From Octopus bimaculoides (Eukaryota), in NCBI RefSeq assembly GCF_001194135.2, contig NC_068998.1, forward strand, positions 17,396,746-17,460,745: a stretch of DNA of 64,000 nt, in the 5' to 3' direction. Both the position numbers and the translations under genes were made by a program. The notes beneath the pieces were generated by a model. It was not told the origin of the DNA. It searched no databases and saw nothing but the letters and a program-made list of their open reading frames with translations. Positions 8,595 to 63,028 of the stretch are shown here, piece after piece (the first letter of the stretch is position 1; each line of letters opens with the position of its first letter).

Positions 8595-9620
8595 AGTCTT
8601 GGTTTCATTGTTGCATTCGGCAAGGTATTACCATTCACCATGGGAGCTAATGAAAGCAAAGCCTTACTATAATTAAGTAGAGAGCATGGCAAAAAAAAAA
8701 AAATTATAAAGCCAGACTGACAAGACAGACAAGCTGTAACCTTAATAGAAAGAAGTCTTGGGGCATAGCAAATTCTCTTTCTACAAGAACTGGCCACTCT
8801 GCATACCCATTGTTAAACATGATGCAACTGCACACATCTAAAAACAAGGTAAATATCTTTTGTGAGATTTTTGCAGAAAAGTTTCTAGTACTAAATACTG
8901 ACAACCAACCACTGCTGATCAGATTACCCTCTGGTACAAAGCTACAGAGTGAGATTTTTAATACAAAAGATATCATGAAGGTGAAGTGTCTCAAACCTGG
9001 TAAAATTATTCGTTCCTACAAATTCCCACCAGAGTCCTGTAAGACTATTATGTGGAAGTTGCTAACCCCCATGTTACTTGTTTCATCTGTGCTTCACTTG
9101 TGTATTTTCAAACCTGTGAAAGCTTATTTATTTAATTTCTATACATTAGACAGATTCTAGATCTGATCTCTCAAAATGTTGGCCTGTTTTATTGCTCAGC
9201 ATCATTAGCAAAGTAATGGAATCAGTTGTCCTCAAAACAATTACTAAACAACTTACAAAAACAAACTCACTATCAATTGCTTACAGCACAGGCAACAGGT
9301 TGCTCCAGTAACAGTTTTTTTTACAAAATGTACACAGTCTACAACTGTCAGTGTTTAGAGCCACGCTTCTGCCATAGTATGAAAGACACTATTTCACAAA
9401 GGTTAGTGCATTTATGTCTGTGCCGGGGCCTCTCAACACCTGATGCCAAGATCCACTATGACCAGGGGCTTCTTGCACCTATGATGTCCCAGTTAAGGCC
9501 AAATACAAAAACATCTTACTCTTGCCATCAGAACTGCAGTGAACCAGTAATCAAAAACTTATTAACAATGGTGTTATTATGTCTATATGCAATAGACAGT
9601 GAAAGTTTATTACATAGCAC
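8595..9620 (+). mobile_element. Decayed CR1/L2-like LINE ORF2 (RT region)
   Basis: Fragments appear in LINE order: KKSWGIANSL, IFCEIFAEKF, DIMKVKCLKPGK, SDLSKCWPVLLLSIISKVMESVV (compare SDPSNYRPISLLSIISKVMESII), CLYAIDS (compare LYADDS). There are multiple stops and frameshifts. Confidence 0.8.
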
Positions 9621-10973
9621 AGATCTTATCAACCAACATTATCAAAATTAGTAGGTTCTAAACTCATTTTGCTTAATGTTATTAGCTGGTTATCGTTATC
9701 AAAAAGACTTTCATCTGAAAGTAACTACACTGTGAAAGAGTCAGTTGATAACACACCAACCTGTTAAATTCATTTGAATTTTAATTTTAACACTTCATGA
9801 AATTTAAAATGAATTTAACAGCTTTGTGTGGTATTAAATGGTTCATCCATGATTTAGATTCTTCAACATACCATCTCAGATCAAGTCACTTGCTAGATAA
9901 ATACATTCTTGAAGCTTTATTCCAAAGTGATCACAATAAGTGGTTTCCACTATTTATGCGCATGGGTGTAATATATATATAGCTTTATTTATTGTGAAGC
10001 CTTACATGCAAATAATATGGTCTATGAAAGCTGAAGTCCTGTAGTTATTGAACTGTAAACAAATTCGATTTGTTGGGTATGTTTCTTGAATTTGAAAGTC
10101 TGAATGAGTGCAACTGTCTGTCAGTTAGTATTGATCAGTATATACAAGAGACATAAGTATATTGATATAGTTAGATAAACTATATAAATGGATGCTATTC
10201 TCAGTTGGCAAAAGATGGCTGATTTAAAAGCAGCTTGTAGGCGAAAATCTTGGAGTGAAATAATTAGATCACATCTTAAGATAATAGATGTTATGAATTT
10301 GAAATAACTCATGAAAGTGTTGATTAGATTTGCAACTCAAACCAAAACTGTTTATGCAAGACAGAAAACATTACATGTTAAACTTATATTTTGTTATTGA
10401 AATGTTAATGAGAAGTTCCTTAGTGAATTTATTATTCTGAAATCTAAGGAAATTAAAAACATTTTGATTCTTTGTTTTATAAAATTTTTAAATGGATTTT
10501 AGCTGAAAATTAAAATATTTCTTTTTTCATGTCATATTTCATTAGAAGTTGTTTTTGAGTATTTCATTGGAAAGCATTTTTTAAAATTAAAATCTGGATT
10601 AATGCAAACCATCATATCTGCATAAAAAATTGTTAAGTCAGTGATTTTTGATTTTAAGAATTGTATCAGATTGTGTAGAAATATAAGCAGTCTTATTTGC
10701 TTAACTAATCAGGAGTTTTGAAATCGCTTGAAATTTAAGCATAAGGTTTAATGCAGTGTATTATTGAAGTATTTTATGTTTCAATGTTGTATTGATGTTG
10801 GAGTTTGATATTAGTTTATGTCTTGAGACCTCAAATTTCTCTAATATTCCATCACTTGTGCTTTTAGTTTTTTTATATAATTTATAATTTTTTAAATATT
10901 TGTTCTATAATTAATTACTATTGATAATCCTTTTCAGTTTTAGCATGTCATACTTATTTACAAGCTATATCTA

Positions 10974-12244
10974 TCAGGTCCTCCCATAAGTAATATCCGG
11001 ATTTTAAATAAGGTAAACAAGTGATCAAATCTTACATTTTAATGAAACTTAATTGTCAAATTGTTTCCCTGATTATCTGACATCTTTCCATCTTTCCATG
11101 TAAGCTTTTTAATCCCATCAGTGAAAAACTCTTTCGGTTTTGAAGAGAACTCTGAAAGGTCAGTTTCGACTTCCTCAGTTGTTTCAAGAGTTAATCCATC
11201 CATCTGTAAACTATGGAACAAATGGTAATTTGAAGGAGCAAAGTCTGGGGAATAAGGTGGATGAGCAATTTTCTCCCAGTTAAGTCCCTTGATCTTCTGT
11301 GACGTGATCTTTGCAGTGTAGAGTCTTGCATTGTCCTGATGAAACACTCCCTTTTGATTAACTAAAGCAGGTCTTTTTTCTTCAAAACAGTATTCAAATG
11401 CTCTAATTATTGACAGTAGATTTGAGTATTGATTGTTGCATTAGTTGGTAGCAGCTTAAAGTGGATGACTCCTTTGCAATCTCACTAAACAGAGAGAAGC
11501 ACCTTCTTCACATGGAGTTCCCTTTTTGGTTGTGGTTGGGCCTTGTCCCCTTCACCAAGCCAATGACTACAATGCTTAATATTCTGATAAAAGACCCATT
11601 TTTCGTCACCAGTCACCACTCTTCAAAAAGGATGAGATGAGTTCATGAGAACAAAGAGAACAACAAATGTTCACTCGGGATTTGCGGTTGGCTTCAGACA
11701 AATCATGAGGTACCCATTTTTCAAGTTTTGGGACCTTTCCAAGCTGTTGAAGATAGCAGTGAATAGTTGTGTGGCTTGAATGAAGCTTGCTTGCCAATTC
11801 TTCAACTGAAACTGCATGATATTTTTCAAATTCTGCCAAAAGGAACTTGTCATCAAACTCAATTGAACATCCTGTTTGGGCCTTGTCTTCAAGACTAAAA
11901 TCTCCACTTTTGAATTTTACAAACCATCTTCTGCAAGTTCTTTCATTCAGGCACTCTTCCTCATAGACTGAGTGAATATTTAGAGTTGCTTCAGCTACAA
12001 AGTTCCTTTTTTTAAACTCATAAAGCATTATGTGCTATCAAATGCTCCTTAGACACTTCCATGTTTGAAGAACTATAATTAGTGAAATTTCAATTAGATT
12101 ATCCTGCAAAATGAAATTTGATTAGTTTAAATATTTCCAAATGCATATAAATATTACTTGATGCCATTAGAAATTCCAAAATACTGTTAAAGCATTTACA
12201 AACTGAAAATATAGAATCCAGACATTACTTATGGGATGACCTGA
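10974..12244 (-). mobile_element. Near-full-length mariner (D,D34D) transposon with inactivated transposase
   Basis: TIRs tcaggtcctcccataagtaatatccggatt (from 10974) and the reverse complement of aatccagacattacttatgggatgacctga (to 12244). TA on the left, TG on the right. Transposase motifs MLYEFK, RWFVKFKSGDFSLED, WVPHDL, VTGDEKW, HQDNAR and HPPYSPDFAPSNYHLF are split over ORFs 11606-12028 and 11039-11347. Confidence 0.95.
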
Positions 12245-13097: not shown

Positions 13098-13844
13098 CAA
13101 GAAAAGTGTCATCTTTAAAAAGTTGAAAAGTGCTCATATGATGTATTTTGGAGCATTTCAGTTAGGTAGAACCCACCAAGCTATTGTGTTAAGAAAATTT
13201 GAAGTCCATATGGCAAGCAAACGAAACATTAATTCTACCATGTTGCTGTTACTAGTTGTTCCCCTATGCAGTGTCTAATTATATAAACTGTAAATGGCAT
13301 TATATAAGAATTGGGAGTTTTAGTCATGAATACAATGAAGTTTTGGTGACTGGATATAAACTATCAAAATTTATCCTGATTGCCAGCTAAAATATCTACT
13401 CACCCCATTCAGATATGTTTTGTCTTTATAGGCTTTGACTGCATAGACCTTCTTTTTTTTTTAATCACAGTTTGAATGGGTTAATGAATTTGAATTACTT
13501 CACTAGAATTGCTTTACAACATACAATTTTATTGAAGAATCAAGGTTGAACATTTAGTGTTTGCAGATATTTAATTTTGATATACTTTTTGAAGTATTCC
13601 TAATATAAAGTCTTTTATTATAGTCTTGACTAATGTATTAGGCTTCTATTTTGTGTTGTGCATCATGGAGGTAATAGATTAAAAGATATTACAAGATAAC
13701 TTGAGTCCTATATAAGTTCAGTTTTCTCAAACAAGATTTATCAAGATATATTTTGTGTATGTATGTAAAATTACCTGTTCTTTAATACTTTTGATTAAAT
13801 GTTTAAAGTAGTGTTTTTTTTTTTTCATAAAGATTTGTAAAGAA

Positions 13845-13911
13845 TTTTTTCTTTCTATTCTAGGTAAGTGTAAAGAAAGATCTTTTATAAATTCAGCTTC
13901 TAAAGGTAATA
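13845..13911 (+). other. Candidate recursive splice site with 42-nt RS-exon
   Basis: ttttttctttctattctAG|GTAAGT at 13863/13864, and a second donor AAG|gtaata after 13905. Confidence 0.5.
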
Positions 13912-16408
13912 TTTGATTTTTCTATTCAAAACTATGATTTATTTTGAAATTAAATTTATCATTAGTTAATAACAGCCTATTTTTATATATATATATTTTA
14001 AGTCATACTTTCTGCTAAGGAGTGTAAAGTTAATAGAACAGTTATCTTAAAGTATTTAGTTTCAATTCTGTATGTTTTAAGTTTAAATCTTGTTAGAGTA
14101 GACCTTTCTTTCGACACTTAGGTGTTACTATAAAATTGTATTACAGTGGAGCTTATTCAATTTGCTGGGGGTCTTCTTTTCTCTCTTGTGTAAAAAAAAT
14201 TAAGTGGAGTTTTTTTATTAACCAAAATAGATTAAATGTAAGTTTAAAATTATTTTCATAATACTTCAGCTTATTGCTAACTGCTGAACCTGTTTATTAC
14301 TAAAGTTTTATTTTGAATCATTGGAAGTAGTATTTTATTGTTTAATAAACAATACAGAATAGAACAGTTATTTTGATTGTTTTGTATTTTCAGTCCCTCA
14401 TCTTTTGATAAGTTTAAGATTATATTCATCTTCAGATTATATCAATTTTCAGCTGTTATTTCACCTCAGGTCATCTCTGATTTGTTGTCAGGTCAGGATG
14501 GAAACCTGCCACTAGTAACCATGTAATTCAGTACTAGATATTCATTGTTGAATGGTTGGCAACTAAACTCAAGTACCCAGCATAATTAAAAAAGCAAAAC
14601 TTGTCAAAGGCAGATGAATTTCTTGAGAACCAACAACATTCATCTCTTGGGGAGGAGATAGATGGGTACTATGAGGATTATTTTGCTCAGCGAAATAATT
14701 GGATGAAATATTTAATTCTATACTGAACCAGTTAGGGCCAAGATTGATGATAGCCACATAAAACCTAAGAGGATGGAAAAGGGGTTGGTTGAAAATTTCA
14801 GGTATCCCAACAGCATTCCTGATTGAGCAGATCTATGATTAAAGGCTCCATATCTTGAACCATCTTGATCCTTTTTCTGTTTAGGACTTTACTGTCTGAT
14901 GTATCCTTCTTCAAGATGTCAGTATTTGATTTCAGGGATATTTCAGTTCCTGTCATTGACCTTTTTGGCAGTGTTGTTATGTAAGTAATACACAATTCAA
15001 AATATCTTGTTTTTGTGTGATGGGAGGTTTTACAACACTTGATAAGATTTGAAATGATTATTAGTGGTTAAAAACCACTCTACTAGGAAGTTGTTAATTC
15101 AGTATACAATCTTAACATAAAATTATTGAGGGATTCAACCATTCCTCTAAAAGAATAATGAATTTACCAGAAAAATATTGGGCTGGAATTTGCTGAAGAA
15201 TATTGTTAAATGTTTATTATTTGCAGGATGAAATTTACCAAAATGCAGATGATTTATAGAGCTTTAGATGCACAACAAACCTAGAGCAAAGATTGACTTT
15301 TATCAAGTTGCAGTCTATCTAAGTAGAATTAGATGATATTGACAGTAGAGAAGTGTTAAAAGAAATACAATGAAGTTTTGGTTTTTGTCAAGATGCAACT
15401 CCACCGTCAGTTATATTTTCTTGAAGAACAGACAGTTTTACTTTGTTGATTTACAAAACACTTTTGATAGGCTTCTAATTTCTGCAATCTAGTCATAATG
15501 GAGATAACTAGGTATGGAAAAGAGCTATCTTGTAGGGAAACCATAATCTATACACAAGTAAATCATGATCAGCAGGAATGTGCAAGACATTTTAAGAGTT
15601 CACTAACTCTCAGATAAATCTCTAGAAGTTTTTTCTCTCCTTAAAGCTGTTCTTGTAAAAAATAGGATTGTGAACCATAAAAATACTGTGTAGAAATGAT
15701 CTAAGAAAGAATTTTATTTTATCTATACCTTTTAATACAGGTTTTACTCAATTTGTAAGAGTTACATCCTATTGAATAGCTCACAATAGTATCTGTATTT
15801 TATTGAGCCTGGAGAAATGGAAAACAAAATTTAATTGCAGAAGCAATTTTAGCTGGAATTAATGCAGTACCAAACTAAATAATGTAAAATGTGTCCAAAG
15901 AGGAATATCATTTAAGGAATCTTGGATAGTAAATATATTTATAAATCTCTTTATACTGGACAGTTCTAACAAGTATTTTAGTGATTTTTACTAACCATTT
16001 TAAACTCACAGGAAGAGTTGAGTTGTTATTGTTTAGCCTCGAAATAGACTTTGGTTGAGCATGTCTATGATCAAAAGCATTCTGGGTATGACTCTCCCAA
16101 ATTTTTCAGGTCTAATATACCTTAAATAGCACTATTCAGTTTGTCCTTTCTTAAGATGTTAGGAAATAATTTAAGTGCAATTTGATTGTTTTTTCTAGTC
16201 AATTAAGCAACCACATTGTTGCTCCCTTGTTTAGGAGTTGAGTGATTTAATCAGTAGAATAAAGTTTTATAAACTTGTTGACCTTTAAGCACACTGCATT
16301 TTCTCTAGAATTGTTTCCCCTGTCACTGCCCTGTTACTACAGAGGAGAAAACTCATACAGTAACACGATGCACCTACAGTGTGCTAAAGGTTAAACCTAA
16401 AATTACAA

Positions 16409-17677: not shown

Positions 17678-17944
17678 TGGCAATAGTGAACACCTAAGAA
17701 TACTGTAGACTTTTTGAGAAGTGAATTGTTGAAGTTTAGCTTCAGTGGTTAAAATAAGTAGATTTTTATTCTGATGCATTAATTCAAAATGTGTTTGGCT
17801 GATTAGTTAAGGTATTTTTTGTCTTCTATTTTGTAATTTTAAAAGAATTCATTTTGAATTTAAGTTTTATTCCATTCTTTTGGAACACTACTTTATTTCC
17901 AAGTTCAATTTTAAGCTCTTGTTCTCATTCTTGCTGTCATTTTT

Positions 17945-18710
17945 CTCCTGTATCTGTCTTATTTTCTCTCTCACTCTCTCCTTTCCTCCTCTCTCTCACT
18001 ATCCCTCCTTTCCCTCCTCTCTCCCTTTCCCTCCTTTCCTCCTCTCTCCCTTTCTCTCCTTTCCTCCCCCTCTCTTTCTCTACTTTCCTCCTCTCTCTTT
18101 CTCTCCTCTCCTTTCCTCCTCTCTCTTTCTCTCCTCTCCTTTCCTCCTCTCCTTTCCTCCTCTCTTTTTCTCTCCTTTCCTTCTCCCTCCTTTCCTCCTC
18201 CCTCCTTTCCGTCTCCCTCCTTTCTTTCTCCTCTTCCTCCTCTCCTCCATCATCTCCCCTTCCTCTCCCTCTTCTTTCCTTTCTCTCCACACCTTTCTCG
18301 CTTTCTCCATGCCTCTCTCTCTCTCTCTCTCTCCATGCCTCTCTCTCTCTCTCTCTCTCTCTCCATGCCTCTCTCTCTCTCCATGCCTCTCTCTCTCTCC
18401 ATGCCTCTCTCTTTCTCCATGCCTCTCTCTCTCTCTCCATACCTTTCTCTCTCTCCATGCCTGTTTCTCTCTCTCTCTCTCTCTACTCCTTTCTCTTTTC
18501 CATCATTCTCTCCTTTTTCAACTTTCTCTTTTCCTCTTTCTCTCCTTTCTCTTTCTCCTCTTTCTCTCTTTTTCCCCTCTCTCTCTTTTTCCACTATCTC
18601 TTTCCACCTTTCCTTCCCTTTCTTCTCTCTTCCTCTTTCTCTCTCATCCTCTTTTTTCCTTCTCCCCCTCTCCTTCCTTTATATGCTTTCTTTCTGTTCT
18701 TCCCTCTCCG
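17945..18710. repeat. About 760-bp homopyrimidine/homopurine low-complexity tract with an internal CCATGCC(TC)n minisatellite
   Basis: The plus strand is almost only C and T. About 8 CCATRCC units separated by (CT)n runs lie at 18307-18461. Confidence 0.95.
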
Positions 18711-19654
18711 CATGAAATATTATTCTCTTTTCAGCTTATTTGTATGGCAAATGAATTTCTTACCTTGATACTTAAAGTTAGTACTCAGTAACTTTCTCCT
18801 TATTTTTTTCAAAGAACAAACAAAGAAACATAAATAATCCACCTGCAAGTTCAATTTGAAACCATTTTATGTTTTGAACACTTCATTAAGTAAATTAAAA
18901 TAATGCATAATTGAAGGTTGTTTATAGGAGAGTTTTTAAATTTCCTTTTCTCTCCTGTTAAACATTACCAAGCCATTTGCATTATATTTCATTTTAATTA
19001 AGACTGAGATTTAAAAAAAAAAGTATATTTCTCATCCCAATTAACTATTTTCTTCATAACTTTTTATCTTTCAGTAAATGTCTAAGAATTTAAATTATTG
19101 ATCATGGTCTTTTACACAACATGAAACTTTGTATTTCTAAGGTAGATTAAAATGTAATTTTTCTTAGGATATTAAGTGAAATAGGTCTTGGTTCTTTATA
19201 GCTATGTACTGGATTTAGTTCATTGAAAAATTATGCATCATTACCTGTAGAATTAATTAGAATTGATAAAAGGATTTTAATGTAGACTTTTGGGGAAAGT
19301 AGAATTTTTGTTTTTTTTAAATGACATGGTTTTTAACAATTAATCCTTTATAATTTCTTGGGTAGGAGGTTGGGCAGTCCCATTAGAATTTTTCAGGTCT
19401 AAGATAAGTTAAATCGGTAAAAAAAGTCAATATTTTTCTTTAGCTTCTTTCATTGCAAAACTAAAAATGGAACATTTATCATTGTCAATTTTCTTCCGAA
19501 TAAAATATAATGCTGTCTGAAAATTTGTTGTCTTTTTGTATTAAATGACCCTCAAGAATTTTTGTGATTTGGTGTTAAACTTTTACATATGTGGATAGGA
19601 TATGAATTTAGATATTAATATATTGCACAAGTCAATGTTATTGAAGTTACAGAT

Positions 19655-31599: not shown

Positions 31600-31980
31600 C
31601 ATCTTCGCTTGGCTTTGCAAGCAAGGATTTGTGGAGGAGGATGTTCATGTCTGTGGCAATCTTGCTGGTGCCCAATGAGTCCAATTCAGGACAAACCAGT
31701 ACAACTGCAGAGACTGCATGGGAAGGTAGGCTGATCAGGGCTGGCTACAGTATCCTTGTTTTCCCTCCTTTTTCTCTTGTCTGCAAGGATGGTCCTGTGG
31801 GTGTCTTCAAAGAAGGCTGTTTCCCAGTGGACAATAAGTCACCAGGCTTCACAGTCAGCAGTAAGAACAGAACTCTGGTGATGATCAATATTGCAGGCAC
31901 CCAGAGAGTTCTTGTACCTCTTCTTTGGTGCCCCTCTATCATTTTTCACACAGTATATTGTTGCACTATTATAATTAAGA
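31600..31980 (-). mobile_element. RTE-clade LINE 3' end encoding a C-terminal C2H2-like finger
   Basis: Translation DRGAPKKRYKNSLGACNIDHHQ..LTADCEAW, then FEDTHRTILADKRKRRENKDTVASPDQPTFPCSLCSCTGLS*IGLIGHQQDC. The 3' UTR is acaaatccttgcttgcaaagccaagcgaag. Confidence 0.85.
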
Positions 31981-32784
31981 TGGCAATAGAAAGGATATCC
32001 ACTCATAGTAAACATATGAAAATGAAATGTGTGAGAGATGTGGATTCTGCCTGTTGTGGTAGAAGGAACTCTTGCAAGGAACATCTCAAGTACCAGAGGC
32101 ATGATAAAATGCTAAATAAACAGCTGATTGGTTAGTTTTCTCTATTGCAAGATGATGCACATGACTGCTCGTCCAACCCATGTCACAGTTGAAAAACAGG
32201 TAAAAATTAATGTCTACTTCCTCTCTAGAAATAGGAATAAATGATTTATTAAGTTCACTTTTCATTAATGGTTTGTACTTGATAATACATTGGCTGATTG
32301 GGTGTTAACTGAAGATAAAGAACTTTCAACTGATATTAATAGTTGGAGCTAAGGTTATTTAATAATATGCTGTGTCAAAACTTCAGATCTTTTGACTTGA
32401 GTTAGGTGTAAATATATTCACTGTAAAAGAAAGGAGAAAAAATGTTAGCACTGCGTTTCTCAACTAGCATGTGCAAAACTAAAGAGAAATAGGTACTTAT
32501 GGTACCCTACAGGCTGATTAGATTTACAAAACTAATCTATTATAATTGTTATTTAAAAAAAGAAACAAGTTTTTTTAAAAGTTCTAAAAGATTTGAAAAC
32601 TGATGTTTTACTTCTGAAGTAGAAGTAGGGAGAAAGAAAATTGATTTTATTATATGAACAATGTAACATATAGATTATATGATATATAATACTGATAATA
32701 TTTAAAGGCCTGAAATTTGGAGAAGGATAGTTGATTACATTGGCTCCAGTATTTAACTGATACTTCTTTTTTATTGACCTTGGA

Positions 32785-35233: not shown

Positions 35234-35833
35234 NNNNNNNNNNNNNNNNNNNNNNNNNNNNNNNNNNNNNNNNNNNNNNNNNNNNNNNNNNNNNNNNNNN
35301 NNNNNNNNNNNNNNNNNNNNNNNNNNNNNNNNNNNNNNNNNNNNNNNNNNNNNNNNNNNNNNNNNNNNNNNNNNNNNNNNNNNNNNNNNNNNNNNNNNNN
35401 NNNNNNNNNNNNNNNNNNNNNNNNNNNNNNNNNNNNNNNNNNNNNNNNNNNNNNNNNNNNNNNNNNNNNNNNNNNNNNNNNNNNNNNNNNNNNNNNNNNN
35501 NNNNNNNNNNNNNNNNNNNNNNNNNNNNNNNNNNNNNNNNNNNNNNNNNNNNNNNNNNNNNNNNNNNNNNNNNNNNNNNNNNNNNNNNNNNNNNNNNNNN
35601 NNNNNNNNNNNNNNNNNNNNNNNNNNNNNNNNNNNNNNNNNNNNNNNNNNNNNNNNNNNNNNNNNNNNNNNNNNNNNNNNNNNNNNNNNNNNNNNNNNNN
35701 NNNNNNNNNNNNNNNNNNNNNNNNNNNNNNNNNNNNNNNNNNNNNNNNNNNNNNNNNNNNNNNNNNNNNNNNNNNNNNNNNNNNNNNNNNNNNNNNNNNN
35801 NNNNNNNNNNNNNNNNNNNNNNNNNNNNNNNNN
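35234..35833. other. Assembly gap flanked by (TA)n on both sides
   Basis: N run between TA arrays. Confidence 0.99.
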
Positions 35834-36462: not shown

Positions 36463-37664
36463 TTGGGCCATCCCATAAATAATGCAGTTTTTTAATACTA
36501 ATTTTATTTTTCAAAATTAAGGTAAACAAAGTTCCGTTTTAATTTAAAATATACTCTCCTTCATCTCTACAATGCTCTTCCATCTATCTGGTAGACTTGC
36601 AAAGCCCTTCTTCCAAAATTCACTTGTCCATGATGAAAAATACTCCTTCAGTACTGTTCTGACCTCTCTACAGAATTCATATTTTTTCCATCCAAATGAT
36701 TTTGAAGACTGTGGAAGAAATGATAATCAGATGGGGGCAATATCTGGTAAATATGCTGGGTAGGGCATTGTTTCCCATTGAAACTGTCATCCTCACTGTA
36801 TGTGGCCAACCATTATCCTGATGGAAGAACACCTTTCGTCTTGAAACCAAAAATGGTCATTTTTCTTTTAGTGCTGACTTCAGCTATTCAAGCTGTTCGC
36901 AGTAGATCTCCTTTGTTATCTGTTGGAAGTTCGAAGTGGACTAAACCTTTCATATCCCACCAAACAGATAACATCTTATATGGGTGAAGACCTTCTTTAA
37001 TCTGGAGTACCAGTGTTTCTCCTTTCCCTGCCCACTGTCTTCGGCACTTGCCATTTTTATAGAGAACCCATTTCTCATCACCAGTCACTATTAGGTCCAA
37101 AAACTGTTCATTTATATGACGTGACAGCAAAGAAGAGCACCCATTGACCCAATTTGCTGACTTTTCTAATGGCACGCAAGTGTCGATGAATGGTTGAATG
37201 ACTAAATCCAAGCTTTTCTGCTAGTTCCTGAACAGTTACAATGAAATTTTGTTCCACCAGGGTTTGCAAGATGTCCTTGTTGAGCTTTACAGGTCTTCCA
37301 AGATGAGGCATTTTTTCTAGGCTGTAGTTCCGGCTTGGAATTTTTGGAACCACCATTGATACTGGCTTATGCTTATTGTCTGATCCCCATATACTGCATT
37401 AATATTCCTCGCACTTCCCATTGTGTTGTTGCCTTTATTGAACTTATAAAGCAAAATATGCCGAATATGCTCCTTTGTCACTTCCATTATAGCTTTGGAA
37501 AACTAACTGTTAAAATCGAACTGCATTCTTCAAAACTTGCACTAAGGGCAAGGTAAAATTACTACCTGCTTTTATAGCACATTGATGCAGATAGTTTACC
37601 CTGTCCCCCTCTGACTTTTAGTTCATGCAATTGAAAAAACTGCATTATTTATGGAATGACCCAA
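36463..37664 (-). mobile_element. Near-full-length mariner (D,D34D) transposon with inactivated transposase
   Basis: 31-bp TIRs with 2 mismatches: ttgggccatcccataaataatgcagtttttt and aaaaaactgcattatttatggaatgacccaa. TA is intact on both sides (36461-36462, 37665-37666). Motifs GRPVKLNKD, ELAEKLGFSHSTIHRHL, IVTGDEKWVLY and LSVWWDMKG are present, with frameshifts. Confidence 0.95.
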
Positions 37665-37966: not shown

Positions 37967-38353
37967 NNNNNNNNNNNNNNNNNNNNNNNNNNNNNNNNNN
38001 NNNNNNNNNNNNNNNNNNNNNNNNNNNNNNNNNNNNNNNNNNNNNNNNNNNNNNNNNNNNNNNNNNNNNNNNNNNNNNNNNNNNNNNNNNNNNNNNNNNN
38101 NNNNNNNNNNNNNNNNNNNNNNNNNNNNNNNNNNNNNNNNNNNNNNNNNNNNNNNNNNNNNNNNNNNNNNNNNNNNNNNNNNNNNNNNNNNNNNNNNNNN
38201 NNNNNNNNNNNNNNNNNNNNNNNNNNNNNNNNNNNNNNNNNNNNNNNNNNNNNNNNNNNNNNNNNNNNNNNNNNNNNNNNNNNNNNNNNNNNNNNNNNNN
38301 NNNNNNNNNNNNNNNNNNNNNNNNNNNNNNNNNNNNNNNNNNNNNNNNNNNNN
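37967..38353. other. Assembly gap
   Basis: N run following (CA)n. Confidence 0.99.
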
Positions 38354-44169: not shown

Positions 44170-44425
44170 TATTCCCTTTCAGTTGAGAGGGCTTTTTATT
44201 CTTGTTGGATACATGTCAATCTCACTAATGCTGGTGCCACAAAAAAAGAAAAAGAAAGCACTTGGTACTCACTCTAAAGTGGCTGGTGTTAAGGACATCC
44301 AGCTTTAGAAATCATGCTAAAACTGAGATATTGGAGAACAACATTATCCTCCCATTGGCCACTGTTGAATTGTCCAACCCATGCCAGCATGGAAGGCAGA
44401 TATGAAGTGATGATAATAATTATGA
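44170..44425 (+). mobile_element. RTE-type 3' tail or SINE tail fragment
   Basis: tgctggtgccac..aaagcac..ggtactcactctaaagtggctggtgttaaggacatccagc..gtccaacccatgccagcatggaagg followed by an (ATG/AAT)n tail. Confidence 0.7.
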
Positions 44426-48800: not shown

Positions 48801-51800
48801 TCCATTTTAGACATTAAAAGATTTTCATGTTATCTGTTCATTTTCAAAAGATAAATATGCATGCTCATGTCTGAACATTAAAATAAGAATTTTGTTTTTC
48901 TTAATGTAGGTGAATTTAAATTGTGTCATTTTGCTGTAATATTTTTTTTTTTTTAATATGCCTCAAATCATTATGTATTATTAATTAAATTATTTCAACT
49001 TTAAATACCAAATATGATTGGCATATCTGAAATCTTTTGGATTTTTTAATAATCATTTTTGATCTTATAATTAGATTAATAATCTATAATTTTTTTAATC
49101 ATAAATTTTAAATGTGCATACAAATGTGATTTAGCAAATGGAATAGAAGTAAATGTATTTTTCTTGCTTTTTTATCATCATAACATTTTAAACTTAAAAA
49201 TTGGTTTGAATATAAGGCTTTTAAAAATGCAAAAGAATTTGCTTGTGACTTTCAAAATTTACTAATGCTTTTATTATAGCATTCTATTTTCTTTCCATAA
49301 CATTTCACAATCCTTTTAGTATCTTTTGAAAGGACCCTGAATTTCATCCATTTTGACAAAAAGCAAATGTAATTTCTATTTTGCATCCTAACAGAAATTA
49401 GGTTGCTCAGTCCATTATGATGATTGTCCTATCACCTTCTTTTGGTCTTTCATTTCTGTCTGGTGGCTATATTGAAAGAGGTAGTATGGTGCAAGCAGCT
49501 GAAAGGGCTAAGGACAAACACTGTCTCAATGGTTAAGTCCTTAATTACTTTTCAGTTTTCATTTGGAAAGAATGGTAAGGGTGGAGAGAGAGTACTTGCC
49601 CTCTAGTAAAGTTTTTGAAAGTTATGAGAGAAGTTATGAGAGAAGTAAGCATATGTGTCTGTAGGCTGGGAACACAGCTGACAGAAGGCACTCAGCAGAC
49701 AAGCCAATCTTTTGATCTCTGAAATTCTTTGATAGGCCTTAAGTAACAATCGTCCTACCCAGCGACTATATCACATATTTGTATATTGTATTGTCACGCT
49801 TCATTAATTTCAGTTTCAGTGTCCTTCTGATGTCCTCTCATCCATTGCCCTTGTAGCAACAATAGTTATTATTTCTGAATATATTGTTTGCTTCACTCAT
49901 TTTTTTCAATTATAGAAAATTGTACATTGAATTAGCAGTATGGCTTTTCCTTCATAAAAGGTTTTACTACTTGTACAATTTTATAAGCATTAAATTAATC
50001 TCTTTCCTCTCTCTGAAATAGGTTTGATAACAATATTAAGCTTTGGTTTGCAACTCTTCGTAATCATGGGCTGATAGTTTAATCAAGAACTTTGCCTGGA
50101 TATTTATCAAGTAATAATAAATTTTATGAATAATTATAGTCTGGTGTAAATATATTATGAAGTTTTCCCTCAGATTATAGTATGTATATATCTATCAGTA
50201 TTTTTAGATGTTTTTAATTTTCTTTCTATAGCGGAATATGGATTCCCTGCATAGAATTGCATCATATAAAGTTTGCCATGTTTAAGAACTCATTTCAAGT
50301 GTATGGCTCTTATCTTTATCATAATCCTTCTTATTATTATCCTCATGAAGCTCTTCTGAAAGTAGCTGAAAAGTAGAAACTTAGGATTGTGCAAGTTAAT
50401 AACAGTGTTTGAGAAGTTGAGGATTTGTGTTTTCTAGTATGCAGCAAGGTTATACTGCAAAGTATGACATAAGTTGAAACATATTCATGAAACAGTTTCA
50501 AACAGGGTTATAGCACACCCAGCAAGTAAAAAGATCTGTTGTAGTTATAGCGAAAGAGATTTTATGAAAACTGCATGACAATCTATGAGTGACTGGTGAT
50601 TGTCGATCATGTCAACGACAATTTTTTCAACATTACACACTAAGATATCCATGATTAAGAAGACTGTATTCAGTTACAGAGAGGTGGTTAGTGTAGATTA
50701 AGAAGACTGCTTTCAGTCACAGAAAATTTTATGTTTAAGCATGTCATGTAAATGTTCAAAGCTAAAGGAGTTATTCACACTTGCAAAAGCAAACTCATCT
50801 TCAAACAATTTTTGCCAGGTTCATGAAATGTCCAAAGCATGTTTTTGAGCATATTGTAAAGTAAGAACCACTGTTTTTGTATGTTGGGGATTAGACAATG
50901 CAATTAGTAACGTTTATTAGATCACCTTTACAAGGCATATTTAAAGGTTTTCTTTGACAGAAGTTATTATTGTTAAGTGTCTTAGAGTGGATGAAAGAAT
51001 ATGAGAAATATGAAAGGTAATTTTGTTAGCACAAGAATGTATAGTTAAACGTCTTGATATAAAGCATTAACCAGACTGGCAGTGGCTAACCTGAAATTTG
51101 GAACCAGCAAAGTAGAAAATTATCTCACCTGCAAATTCTGTGATAAGACCCATTCTCATTTAGTGTATTTCTAGCATTTCTGAAGAATTGTTTGAATTTT
51201 CTTTATTTTGTCCCTTAGATGGAGATTAAAACTTAGACTTCATATTACAGACCAATCCATTCCAATTAAGATTTTTTTGTTTCATTCATCTTCTTCATTA
51301 AATAACTACTCAGACATATTACTTCAATATTTGTGCACAAATTACTAGAATTTTTATAATAAAAAAAAAATTGTCTAACAATTCTCTAAAATTAACTTCA
51401 CACTCTAAACTGCCTAAATGGATTTTCATATTTCTAAACAGATGTGTAAGAGTTAGTATTAAATTTTCATATATATTTGTAAATTGTTTAAATGCTTGGT
51501 TTTTTTTTTCAGAAACAATAGCTTGCCTACTAATGCAAGTGCATCATAGCAAGAATTAGTGATCATTCAATGCAAAAAGCAATCTAATAATAAAGCATTA
51601 TAAGAACTTGTCTAATGAACTCTTTTCAATGCTTGATTTGATGTCAGTAAAAGCCATCTACTCCTCGTTCCACTTGAAGCAGATAATGCTCATGTGGTTT
51701 CCAAACCTTGTTAGTGATGCTAACAGTGAAAGTCGTTTTTGTTTTTTTTTTTTCTTTTCTACATGAAGTGATGTTGGTTTCATGAATCTTTAAGCTCTGG

Positions 51801-51814
51801 CGAAGAGATATCTA

Positions 51815-51900
51815 ATCATCATCATCGTTTAACATCCACTTTCCATGCTGGCGTGGGCTGGACAATTTGACTGAGAACTGACTGTACCAGGCTGACAACT
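51815..51900 (-). mobile_element. RTE-type 3' tail fragment
   Basis: catcatcatcgtttaacatccactttccatgctggcgtgggctggac is the reverse complement of the shared tail. Confidence 0.75.
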
Positions 51901-57267: not shown

Positions 57268-57326
57268 NNNNNNNNNNNNNNNNNNNNNNNNNNNNNNNNN
57301 NNNNNNNNNNNNNNNNNNNNNNNNNN
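57268..57326. other. Assembly gap whose flanks overlap by about 42 bp
   Basis: agttttcacagagtgtggtaatacacacgttcattgtattag occurs on both sides of the Ns. Confidence 0.95.
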
Positions 57327-58730: not shown

Positions 58731-59257
58731 NNNNNNNNNNNNNNNNNNNNNNNNNNNNNNNNNNNNNNNNNNNNNNNNNNNNNNNNNNNNNNNNNNNNNN
58801 NNNNNNNNNNNNNNNNNNNNNNNNNNNNNNNNNNNNNNNNNNNNNNNNNNNNNNNNNNNNNNNNNNNNNNNNNNNNNNNNNNNNNNNNNNNNNNNNNNNN
58901 NNNNNNNNNNNNNNNNNNNNNNNNNNNNNNNNNNNNNNNNNNNNNNNNNNNNNNNNNNNNNNNNNNNNNNNNNNNNNNNNNNNNNNNNNNNNNNNNNNNN
59001 NNNNNNNNNNNNNNNNNNNNNNNNNNNNNNNNNNNNNNNNNNNNNNNNNNNNNNNNNNNNNNNNNNNNNNNNNNNNNNNNNNNNNNNNNNNNNNNNNNNN
59101 NNNNNNNNNNNNNNNNNNNNNNNNNNNNNNNNNNNNNNNNNNNNNNNNNNNNNNNNNNNNNNNNNNNNNNNNNNNNNNNNNNNNNNNNNNNNNNNNNNNN
59201 NNNNNNNNNNNNNNNNNNNNNNNNNNNNNNNNNNNNNNNNNNNNNNNNNNNNNNNNN
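58731..59257. other. Assembly gap
   Basis: N run. Confidence 0.99.
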
Positions 59258-62043: not shown

Positions 62044-62095
62044 GTCCAACCCATGCCAACATGGAAAATGATGTTAAAGGGTGATAATGATGATG
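62044..62095 (+). mobile_element. RTE-type 3' tail fragment
   Basis: gtccaacccatgccaacatggaaaatgatgttaaag..gataatgatgatg. Confidence 0.7.
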
Positions 62096-62340
62096 TTATC
62101 AGTTCTTATTGAATGTGCCTGTTTTTATAACTCTACTAAAAACATTTTTTATATCTAACTCAGTATATGAATTATGAAATGTAATTTCTTGTTTTATGCT
62201 TACCACATAAGGCAAACCATCTGAATTTTGAGATGTTTTAAATTTTCACTAGCATCAGTAATACAAGTTGGCCTATGTGTTGGGTGATTATTTGCATGTA
62301 CAGAGTAGTAGAATGGTATGTTTGTCCTTGAATTCTAGAA

Positions 62341-62398
62341 CTTTATTTTTTTTTTGCAGGTGAGTAATTTTTACACCAACTGAAGCAAAAAGGTAACT
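62341..62398 (+). other. Candidate recursive splice site with 33-nt RS-exon
   Basis: ctttattttttttttgcAG|GTGAGT at 62359/62360, and a second donor AAG|gtaact after 62392. The exon has stops in all three frames. Confidence 0.55.
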
Positions 62399-62771
62399 GC
62401 ATATATATTATTTGGTATTTATCCTGATATGATTAGCTTCCTCAGTATTCTCATCAAAGAATAGTTTCAGTTCATCATCATAAAGCTGCAGAAGAGCAAG
62501 TTTCATTTTATTGTTATAACAACAATTTAGATATTCGTTTCTGAATCTCAGACATCACATTGAGGACACCATCTGTCTGTTTCTCTGATGTATGATTCAC
62601 TTATTTCATTCTGATGTGTCACAGGAGCACCAAATCATCTCTCACATTGTCTTATTTGAAATTTTCTCAAAGCAAGCAATTTTTTCTTGTATTCAGTTCC
62701 AGCTTTTGAAGATTTTCTTGCTAGTCTATCTTCTGTTTGTTATTTCAAAGCACCTCACTCTGCCCTTCCCC

Positions 62772-63028
62772 NNNNNNNNNNNNNNNNNNNNNNNNNNNNN
62801 NNNNNNNNNNNNNNNNNNNNNNNNNNNNNNNNNNNNNNNNNNNNNNNNNNNNNNNNNNNNNNNNNNNNNNNNNNNNNNNNNNNNNNNNNNNNNNNNNNNN
62901 NNNNNNNNNNNNNNNNNNNNNNNNNNNNNNNNNNNNNNNNNNNNNNNNNNNNNNNNNNNNNNNNNNNNNNNNNNNNNNNNNNNNNNNNNNNNNNNNNNNN
63001 NNNNNNNNNNNNNNNNNNNNNNNNNNNN
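62772..63028. other. Assembly gap
   Basis: N run. Confidence 0.99.

What the first reader, a model, noticed from the sequence alone, without database searches (positions are those of the whole stretch)
62341..62398. RS-site-like motif 3: PPT-CAG|GTGAGT with a 33-nt exon stopped in all three frames
Seen: a near-ideal acceptor, a consensus fused donor, and a second donor AAG|gtaact. The exon reads GTG..AAC TGA, G TGA, and GT GAG TAA, so it cannot code. A TGCATG (Rbfox-type) motif lies about 60 nt upstream. This is the best match to the stop-containing RS-exon model.
Basis: partly seen in the sequence, partly recalled or inferred. Interest (0 to 1): 0.75.

Follow-up and report, generated by a model that had tools for sequence, protein, structure and literature searches.

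The report
Unverified recursive-splice-site look-alike in octopus DNA
A near-perfect back-to-back splice acceptor and donor sits in repeat-rich, non-coding octopus DNA and looks exactly like a recursive splice site, but I could not show that it is transcribed, spliced or conserved, so a chance match is somewhat more likely than a working site.

Summary
The motif is real and at the stated coordinates: TTTATTTTTTTTTTGCAG|GTGAGT, junction 62359/62360. A 33-nt segment follows, stopped in all three frames, then AAG|GTAACT. TGCATG lies 62 nt upstream.

The window is Octopus DNA (about 30% GC, five assembly gaps, mariner and SINE-like relics). I found no coding exon, so host gene, strand and intron status are unknown.

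How unusual the site looks depends on the statistic:
- Strict consensus: 0.02 expected per window.
- Threshold-free PWM maximum: P = 0.05-0.10.
- Downstream donor within 20-100 nt: about 4% by chance.
- Three-frame stops: 24% once GTGAGT is given, because its TGA closes one frame.
- TGCATG: at background frequency.

A second, unrelated site of the same build lies at 13864 (+); the minus strand has nothing comparable. Two such sites give P about 0.001-0.07, using partly post-hoc thresholds.

Every sequence-level feature of a ratchet point is met. Junction reads, sense-strand intron location and conservation could not be tested.

My estimates: about 0.5 fortuitous or unused, about 0.28 true recursive site, about 0.12 ordinary unannotated or poison exon. 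If real, it is a new member of a known kind and would be the first reported in a cephalopod.

The parts
62293..62298 (+). TGCATG hexamer (Rbfox-type), 62 nt upstream of the junction
   Evidence: Present. Its frequency in the window is at expectation: 22 observed against 19-21 expected on the + strand. Probably incidental.
62345..62345 (+). Best candidate branch-point A (cTTTAt fits yUnAy), 14 nt upstream of the acceptor G
   Evidence: Read directly from the sequence. The nearest upstream AG is at 62337, so the stretch from the branch point to 62358 is AG-free. The 14-nt distance is short but workable. This is inference only.
62342..62359 (+). Acceptor-like element: TTTATTTTTTTTTT tract followed by GCAG
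   Evidence: 14 of the 16 positions from -20 to -5 are pyrimidines.
62360..62365 (+). Fused donor GTGAGT directly after the AG (candidate ratchet-point 5' splice site)
   Evidence: CAG|GTGAGT can pair with the U1 5' end over 9 contiguous positions, with one G.U at +3 (established U1 pairing rule). PWM score 9.5 bits, at the top of the scale.
62360..62392 (+). 33-nt putative cryptic RS-exon, stopped in all three frames
   Evidence: Stops at 62381, 62361 and 62365. The chance of stops in all three frames given GTGAGT is 24%.
62390..62398 (+). Downstream competing donor AAG|GTAACT
   Evidence: PWM score 3.79 bits. Only 37 of 3333 GT sites on this strand score as high. The chance of one within +20 to +100 nt is 4.4%. 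It is weaker than the fused donor, as the RS-exon competition model requires (PMC8605326).
13840..13914 (+). Second site of the same build, on the same strand: TTTTTTCTTTCTATTCTAG|GTAAGT, a 42-nt segment, then AAG|GTAATA
   Evidence: Its flanks show no significant similarity to those of 62360, and it is not in a detected repeat.
62044..62095 (+). 3' core of a dispersed SINE-like octopus repeat, 265 nt upstream (context only; the motif lies outside it)
   Evidence: Matches 51815-51863(-) and 44372-44424(+) in the window and an O. vulgaris locus.

Best explanation
The sequence is a genuine, consensus-grade juxtaposition of a 3' splice site and a 5' splice site. It lies in T-rich, repeat-laden, apparently non-coding Octopus DNA.

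The single most likely account is that it is fortuitous. A 10-T homopolymer run happens to abut GCAG|GTGAGT. The site is then either not transcribed on this strand or, at most, an occasional cryptic splice site that has not been selected as a ratchet point.

Shown: the motif, its rank in the window, and the absence of any detectable coding exon, repeat membership or RNA family.

Inferred: that it is unused.
For: - **Genome-wide expectation.** Sites of this quality arise at about 0.01-0.04 per 62 kb per strand under Markov nulls trained on the window.
- **Threshold-free test.** A window maximum this high occurs in 5-10% of simulated windows.
- **Biased strand.** The + strand carries 2.4-4 times more pyrimidine-rich 16-mers than the - strand and many T runs: 21 runs of at least 10 T. 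Acceptor-like tracts are therefore cheap here.
- **No host gene.** About 100 of the most protein-like ORFs, including all those near the site, have no homolog among 5.8 billion proteins, which include annotated Octopus proteins. Two ORFs tested are not on record as called genes.
- **No sign of + strand transcription.** 5'ss-like hexamers are symmetric between strands. TGCATG is not enriched. Composition alone explains the AATAAA asymmetry.
- **Mammalian experience.** Motif-bearing AGGT sites are rarely recursive: 19 RS sites in mouse brain, and 46 of 84 read-supported candidates were simply unannotated exons (PMC8797253).
Against: - **Strict criteria make it rare.** Expected 0.02 per window, or 0.003-0.01 at its own quality level.
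- **The downstream donor is present.** The RS-exon model requires it, and chance supplies one only about 4% of the time.
- **A second site of the same build** lies at 13864 on the same strand, and none of that quality lies on the other strand.
  - Two such sites: P = 9e-4 under the order-5 Markov null.
  - P = 0.001-0.009 from an independence estimate using the real pyrimidine-rich windows.
  - P = 0.013-0.067 for the threshold-free second maximum.
- **Invertebrate precedent.** In every invertebrate Shepard et al. studied, ratchet-point motifs are 4-22 times enriched on the sense strand of introns over 50 kb (PMC2773006, Table 2). If the window is such an intron read on the + strand, most sites this good would be real.
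Confidence: 0.5

Rival explanations
1. It is a true recursive splice site (ratchet point) inside a very long intron of a + strand octopus gene.

Proposed sequence of events:
1. The 33-nt segment is first defined as a cryptic RS-exon, by the acceptor at 62359 and the donor at 62393.
2. The upstream exon is spliced to 62360. This rebuilds a strong 5' splice site, (exon end)|GTGAGT.
3. That rebuilt site out-competes the weaker AAG|GTAACT and removes the RS-exon together with the rest of the intron.
4. If the weaker donor is used instead, the stop-laden exon marks the mRNA for nonsense-mediated decay.

The site at 13864 would be an earlier ratchet point of the same intron, 48.5 kb upstream.
For: - All sequence-level features of the published model are present (model as in PMC8605326, and PMC5126111): a T-rich tract, CAG|GTGAGT, a short cryptic exon, a weaker downstream donor, and no coding capacity.
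- Two independent sites of this build lie on one strand and none of that quality on the other. Nominal P is 0.001-0.07.
- The observed density, about 3 per 100 kb, resembles fly large introns (2.2 per 100 kb) rather than the background of about 0.1 (PMC2773006).
- No coding exon was detected across the 64-kb window and it is very AT-rich (30% GC against 35-39% at five other Octopus loci). This is compatible with a giant intron.
Against: - No host gene, strand or transcription evidence.
- An exon-free 64-kb window is more likely intergenic than a sense-strand giant intron. My prior for the latter is roughly 0.05-0.15.
- The significance depends on thresholds chosen after seeing the sites. At looser thresholds, two sites are unremarkable (P = 0.08-0.18).
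- A 33-nt exon is at the short end for exon definition (from my own knowledge of exon-size limits).
- Recursive splicing has not been reported in any cephalopod in the searchable literature.
Confidence: 0.28
2. It is the acceptor of an ordinary unannotated exon: a non-coding, UTR or lncRNA exon, or a poison or decoy cassette exon. The exon ends at 62392 or at a donor further downstream, and splicing is conventional. GTGAGT at its 5' end is then incidental.
For: - The acceptor and the donor at 62393 form a plausible exon pair.
- In mouse, more than half of read-supported intronic AGGT candidates turned out to be unannotated exons (46 of 84, PMC8797253).
- The segment cannot code, which fits a poison or non-coding exon.
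Against: - A 33-nt exon with a consensus 5' splice site at its very first base would be expected to be removed again by that site (donor competition, PMC8605326).
- No transcript evidence is available.
- No homolog or annotated gene was found in the window.
Confidence: 0.12
3. This is an explanation of origin and is compatible with any of the others. The T10 tract would be the poly(A) tail of a retroposed element inserted on the - strand. The element body would be 62356 onward, read leftward, including the 48-codon ORF at 62411-62554(-). The acceptor-like tract would then be a by-product, as in antisense-Alu exonisation.
For: Read on the - strand, the order is: ORF end at 62411, about 55 nt of sequence, then A10 at 62355-62346. 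Antisense poly(A) tails are a well-known source of polypyrimidine tracts (established knowledge of Alu exonisation).
Against: - No target-site duplication of 8 nt or more.
- The region is not repeated in the window or in 100 kb of other Octopus DNA.
- The ORF has no homolog and no Pfam match.
Confidence: 0.1

Closest known systems
Drosophila intronic ratchet points with cryptic RS-exons (Ubx, kuz, Bx; Hatton 1998, Burnette 2005, Duff 2015, Joseph 2018/2021)
   Same: - Tandem acceptor|donor around AG|GT.
- A long T-rich tract.
- A consensus donor.
- A short cryptic exon (about 50 nt in flies, 33 nt here) bounded by a weaker downstream donor.
- Exon content non-coding (PMC8605326).
   Different: - Fly sites are proven by junction reads, saw-tooth coverage and mutagenesis, and their core motif is ultraconserved. 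None of that is available here.
- The host intron and strand are unknown here.
- The taxon is a cephalopod, where recursion has not been described.
Vertebrate RS-sites / RS-exons in long neuronal genes (Sibley et al. 2015; Blazquez et al. 2018)
   Same: - YAG|GT core.
- RS-exon defined first.
- Competition between the reconstituted donor and the downstream donor.
- Inclusion introduces premature stop codons (PMC5126111; PMC6224609 abstract).
   Different: - Vertebrate high-confidence sites are few. Nine fully suppressed sites were noted definitively in mammals (PMC8605326) and 19 in mouse brain (PMC8797253).
- They were defined from RNA data and conservation, not from motif alone.
- The motif is not enriched on the sense strand of vertebrate large introns (PMC2773006).
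Poison / decoy cassette exons
   Same: A short exon with stop codons flanked by usable splice sites. Inclusion would trigger nonsense-mediated decay.
   Different: Such exons do not normally begin with a consensus donor. They are recognised from transcripts and are usually highly conserved, and neither point could be tested here.
Exonisation from antisense retroposon poly(A) tails (Alu-type)
   Same: A homopolymeric T run immediately upstream of an AG supplies the polypyrimidine tract.
   Different: No repeat family, target-site duplication or element body could be demonstrated.

Membership tests
Recursive splice site / ratchet point with cryptic RS-exon | Juxtaposed strong 3' splice site and 5' splice site around a central AG|GT | tested here: met
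   TTTATTTTTTTTTTGCAG|GTGAGT at 62342-62365. It is the only match to Y8NCAGGTRAGT in the window and the top-ranked of 361 AGGT sites.
Recursive splice site / ratchet point with cryptic RS-exon | A downstream 5' splice site, weaker than the ratchet-point donor, bounding a short cryptic exon | tested here: met
   AAG|GTAACT lies 33 nt downstream and scores 3.79 bits against 9.5 bits for the fused donor. The chance of such a donor within 20-100 nt is 4.4%.
Recursive splice site / ratchet point with cryptic RS-exon | Cryptic exon is non-coding, frame-breaking or stop-containing | tested here: met
   Stops in all three frames. This discriminates weakly, because it is expected 24% of the time given GTGAGT.
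Recursive splice site / ratchet point with cryptic RS-exon | Lies within a long intron, on the sense strand of the host gene | tested here: inconclusive
   No coding exon or homolog was found anywhere in the window. T>A skew and fewer AATAAA on the + strand fit + strand transcription but are explained by composition. The one calibrating octopus gene shows no such skew.
Recursive splice site / ratchet point with cryptic RS-exon | Splicing intermediates: junction reads into the site, lariats, saw-tooth coverage in nascent or total RNA | not testable with these tools
Recursive splice site / ratchet point with cryptic RS-exon | Acceptor|donor core conserved in related species while the cryptic exon and flanks drift | not testable with these tools
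   No orthologous Octopus sequence could be reached. The local ORFs have no called homologs. The metagenome scan for the motif was empty, and a second scan for a 23-nt consensus of the window's commonest repeat was also empty. This suggests, though a single exact-match probe cannot prove, that the collection holds no octopus DNA.
Rbfox-regulated exon | (U)GCAUG near the exon, enriched and conserved | tested here: inconclusive
   One TGCATG lies 62 nt upstream. The hexamer is at background frequency in the window (22 against 19-21 expected). Conservation could not be tested.
Retroposon-tail-derived (Alu-type) exonisation | The T tract is the antisense poly(A) of a recognisable repeat copy with target-site duplications | tested here: not met
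   No target-site duplication of 8 nt or more. No other copy was found in the window or in five Octopus loci.

The most novel reading that the evidence does not exclude
The window is a single octopus intron longer than 64 kb, read on the + strand, and it is removed stepwise at two ratchet points (13864 and 62360), each with its own cryptic RS-exon. To my knowledge these would be the first recursive splice sites reported in a cephalopod or any lophotrochozoan. Ratchet-point use in giant introns would then be an ancestral bilaterian trait that octopus retained as its genome expanded.
Probability: 0.25. Interest if true: 0.5.

Novelty: not a real feature. Interest (0 to 1): 0.27.

Why it matters
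If the site is used, it would extend recursive splicing to cephalopods. Until now it has been documented in insects and vertebrates and inferred from motif enrichment in sea urchin, bee, beetle and mosquito. Cephalopods have large genomes and long neural genes, which makes them a natural place to ask whether giant introns need ratchet points.

The window would also offer two concrete, testable sites.

If the site is unused, it is a useful caution. In T-rich, AT-rich DNA a textbook acceptor|donor motif, complete with "stops in all frames" and a nearby TGCATG, can arise without function. Motif-only calls of recursive sites need RNA or conservation data.

I chose the novelty label "not a real feature" because the modal reading is a chance match. 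The sequence itself is real. If it proves functional, the correct label would be "new member of a known kind".

Tried and rejected
1. **Rfam scan of the whole window:** no family. ARAGORN found no tRNA.
2. **Search for a host gene or coding exons.**
   - Pfam on ten candidate ORFs found only the mariner HTH_48 domain.
   - Homolog search with all ORFs around the site (1194 aa) found nothing.
   - Homolog search with the 84 most protein-like ORFs elsewhere (4915 aa) found nothing.
3. **Exact look-up of two window ORFs in public assemblies, to locate the locus:** not on record.
4. **Repeat membership of the motif region:** none. I checked a self-comparison, five Octopus loci, and a direct comparison of the two sites.
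5. **Retroposon-tail origin:** no target-site duplication.
6. **Conservation through public collections.** A splice-site-anchored pattern found nothing in metagenome contigs. A 23-nt consensus of the window's commonest repeat also found nothing, so the first negative is probably uninformative.
7. **Strand of transcription from skews, poly(A)-signal depletion and 5'ss-like hexamers:** all explained by composition or symmetric between strands. Calibration on one octopus gene failed to support the skew rule.
8. **Rbfox idea:** TGCATG is not enriched.
9. **MaxEntScan scoring:** not installed. I used a generic metazoan PWM with frequencies from memory, so the bit scores are approximate.
10. **Sibley et al. 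2015 (PMC4471124):** not held. I cite it only through papers that describe it.
11. **One simulation timed out and was rerun smaller**.

Full report
**1. The observation**

| Feature | Coordinates | Sequence |
|---|---|---|
| Pyrimidine tract | 62342-62355 | TTTATTTTTTTTTT |
| Acceptor | 62356-62359 | GCAG |
| Fused donor | 62360-62365 | GTGAGT |
| Putative exon (33 nt) | 62360-62392 | GTGAGTAATTTTTACACCAACTGAAGCAAAAAG |
| Second donor | 62390-62398 | AAG\|GTAACT |
| Rbfox-type hexamer | 62293-62298 | TGCATG |

- The 33-nt segment carries TGA at 62381 (frame 1), TGA at 62361 (frame 2) and TAA at 62365 (frame 3).
- A plausible branch point (cTTTAt, A at 62345) lies 14 nt from the acceptor.
- The nearest upstream AG is at 62337.

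**2. What the window is**

- It is about 30% GC with five runs of N, as in a scaffolded draft assembly.
- It contains microsatellites, a CT-rich low-complexity block at 17.8-18.9 kb, and two decayed Mos1-type mariner copies on the - strand. Pfam HTH_48 matches with E = 6.5e-16.
- It also contains copies of a SINE-like repeat.
- The mariner's best protein matches are Limulus and Octopus entries annotated as "SETMAR-like".
- I fetched DNA around those genes. The window shares many different dispersed repeats, at 70-90% identity, with loci from O. bimaculoides, O. vulgaris and O. sinensis. With the Limulus locus it shares only the mariner. The window is therefore Octopus DNA.
- It is more AT-rich than the five comparison loci, which are 35-39% GC.
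- There is no Rfam family and no tRNA.

**3. Is there a host gene?**

I could not find one.
- Two long ORFs are not on record as called genes.
- All ORFs within 2 kb of the site, and the 84 most protein-like ORFs elsewhere in the window, have no homolog. The database of 5.8 billion proteins includes annotated Octopus proteins.
- No coding exon of 40 codons or more is recognisable among the ORFs I searched. The window is either one very long intron or intergenic DNA.

The strand of transcription is also open.
- T exceeds A on the + strand, and AATAAA is 1.6 times rarer there than on the - strand. Low-order composition explains this.
- 5'ss-like hexamers are symmetric between strands.
- The one octopus gene I could use for calibration shows no T>A skew on its sense strand.

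**4. Is the motif part of a repeat?**

No evidence supports that.
- The region 62100-62770 has no second copy in the window or in about 100 kb of other Octopus DNA.
- A SINE-like 3' core ends 265 nt upstream, at 62044-62095.
- Read on the - strand, the T10 run looks like a poly(A) tail following a 48-codon ORF. I found no target-site duplication, no homolog and no other copy.

**5. More than chance?**

The answer depends on the statistic.

| Test | Result |
|---|---|
| Strict consensus Y8NCAGGTRAGT, both strands | 1 observed, 0.02 expected |
| AGGT sites with tract ≥12/16 and donor half ≥3 bits | 2 of 361: 62360(+) and 13864(+) |
| Same loose threshold, Markov nulls trained on the + strand | 0.4-0.8 expected; P(≥2) = 0.08-0.18 |
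| Same loose threshold, 190 kb of strand sequence from five other Octopus loci | 3 weaker sites, the same rate |
| Level both sites actually reach (14/16 plus GTRAGT), order-3/order-5 Markov | 0.02-0.04 expected; P(≥2) = 2e-4 to 9e-4 |
| Same level, estimate using the real count of pyrimidine-rich windows | 0.05-0.14 expected; P(≥2) = 0.001-0.009 |
| Threshold-free PWM, window maximum (10.5 bits at 62360) | P = 0.05-0.10 |
| Threshold-free PWM, second maximum (8.4 bits at 13864) | P = 0.013-0.067 |

Single features:
- A downstream donor as good as AAG|GTAACT within 20-100 nt: 4.4%.
- TGCATG within 100 nt upstream: 3.4% by position, but the hexamer is not enriched in the window.
- Three-frame stops: 24% once GTGAGT is given.

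The site at 13864 also has a downstream donor, AAG|GTAATA at +42, scoring 1.3 bits.

Combining the threshold-free pair statistic with the two downstream-donor tail probabilities gives roughly P = 0.01. This is my own Fisher combination of the results. It is suggestive, not compelling.

**6. Comparison with what is known**

The anatomy is that of a ratchet point with a cryptic RS-exon: a tandem acceptor|donor, a short cryptic exon, a downstream donor that loses the competition, and non-coding exon content (PMC8605326; PMC5126111).

How well the motif alone predicts function differs sharply by lineage.
- Shepard et al. counted ratchet-point motifs per 100 kb in introns over 50 kb, against the complementary strand. 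Fly 2.2 against 0.10, mosquito 1.0 against 0, beetle 0.81 against 0.10, urchin 0.54 against 0.07, bee 0.48 against 0.12. The eight vertebrates had ratios of 0.9-1.5 (PMC2773006, Table 2).
- In mouse brain only 19 sites were confirmed. Of 84 read-supported candidates, 46 were unannotated exons (PMC8797253).
- No mollusc has been examined. The only paper in the library that contains both "recursive splicing" and "cephalopod" uses each term once and is about microexons.

**7. Weighing**

- If the window is a + strand giant intron and octopus behaves like the other invertebrates, a site this good is probably real. The density of two sites in 62 kb would match fly introns.
- An exon-free 64-kb window is a priori more likely to be intergenic. 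My rough prior for a sense-strand giant intron is 0.05-0.15.
- A composite P of about 0.01 supports a Bayes factor of at most about 8.
- That puts a true recursive site at roughly 0.25-0.3.

My estimates:
- 0.5 fortuitous or unused motif.
- 0.28 true recursive site.
- 0.12 acceptor of an ordinary unannotated, poison or non-coding exon.
- The remainder for other explanations. The retroposon-tail origin is compatible with any of these.

**8. Verdict**

- The interpretation cannot be decided with the tools at hand.
The downstream donor and the second site on the same strand carry some.
- If real, it is a new member of a known kind, in a lineage where it has not been reported.
- The decisive data are the position of the locus in the annotated assembly, nuclear or total RNA-seq junctions and saw-tooth coverage, and alignment to other Octopus genomes.

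Noticed in passing
window 13840-13914 (+): A second ratchet-point-like site: TTTTTTCTTTCTATTCTAG|GTAAGT, a 42-nt segment (stops in frames 1 and 2 only), then AAG|GTAATA. It is on the same strand, 48.5 kb upstream of the finding. Its flanks are unrelated to those of 62360 and it is not in a detected repeat.
   Followed up: partly
window 11042-12034 (-) and 36547-37500 (-): Two frame-shifted Mos1-type mariner transposase relics (HTH_48). The first is 85% identical in DNA to an O. bimaculoides copy whose ORF NCBI annotates as 'histone-lysine N-methyltransferase SETMAR-like'. That name probably reflects a mariner fragment rather than a SETMAR gene. A 79% identical copy exists in Limulus.
   Followed up: partly
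window 44372-44424 (+), 51815-51863 (-), 62044-62095 (+); also L005 192-242: A dispersed SINE-like repeat with a conserved 3' core (…GTCCAACCCATGCCAGCATGGAAAG…GATGATGAT). It is shared with an O. vulgaris locus. ARAGORN finds no tRNA-like head.
   Followed up: partly
window 17800-18900: A CT-rich low-complexity block (GC skew -0.44). It produces spurious ORFs of 170-330 codons on both strands and supplies 40% of all pyrimidine-rich 16-mers on the + strand.
   Followed up: no
window 35234-35833, 37967-38353, 57268-57326, 58731-59257, 62772-63028: Five assembly gaps (runs of N). Three of them abut TA or CA/GT microsatellites, which suggests the assembly broke at simple repeats. The gap at 62772 begins 380 nt downstream of the finding and limits analysis of its right flank.
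   Followed up: no
window 62411-62554 (-): A 48-codon ORF (…MKLALLQLYDDELKLFFDENTEEANHIRINTK*) that ends about 55 nt before the A10 run when read on the - strand. It resembles a retroposon 3' end, but it has no homolog, no Pfam match and no target-site duplication.
   Followed up: partly
window 51100-51170 (-): The best recursive-site-like candidate on the - strand: TTTGCAG|GTGAGA with a downstream CAG|GTTAGC at +38. Its pyrimidine tract is poor (10/16).
   Followed up: no
window 8680-9650 (+) and 31840-32110 (-): ORFs that look to the eye like decayed non-LTR reverse-transcriptase fragments (…SKCWPVLLLSIISKVMESVV… and …RGAPKKRYKNSL…). Pfam and the homolog search did not confirm them.
   Followed up: partly
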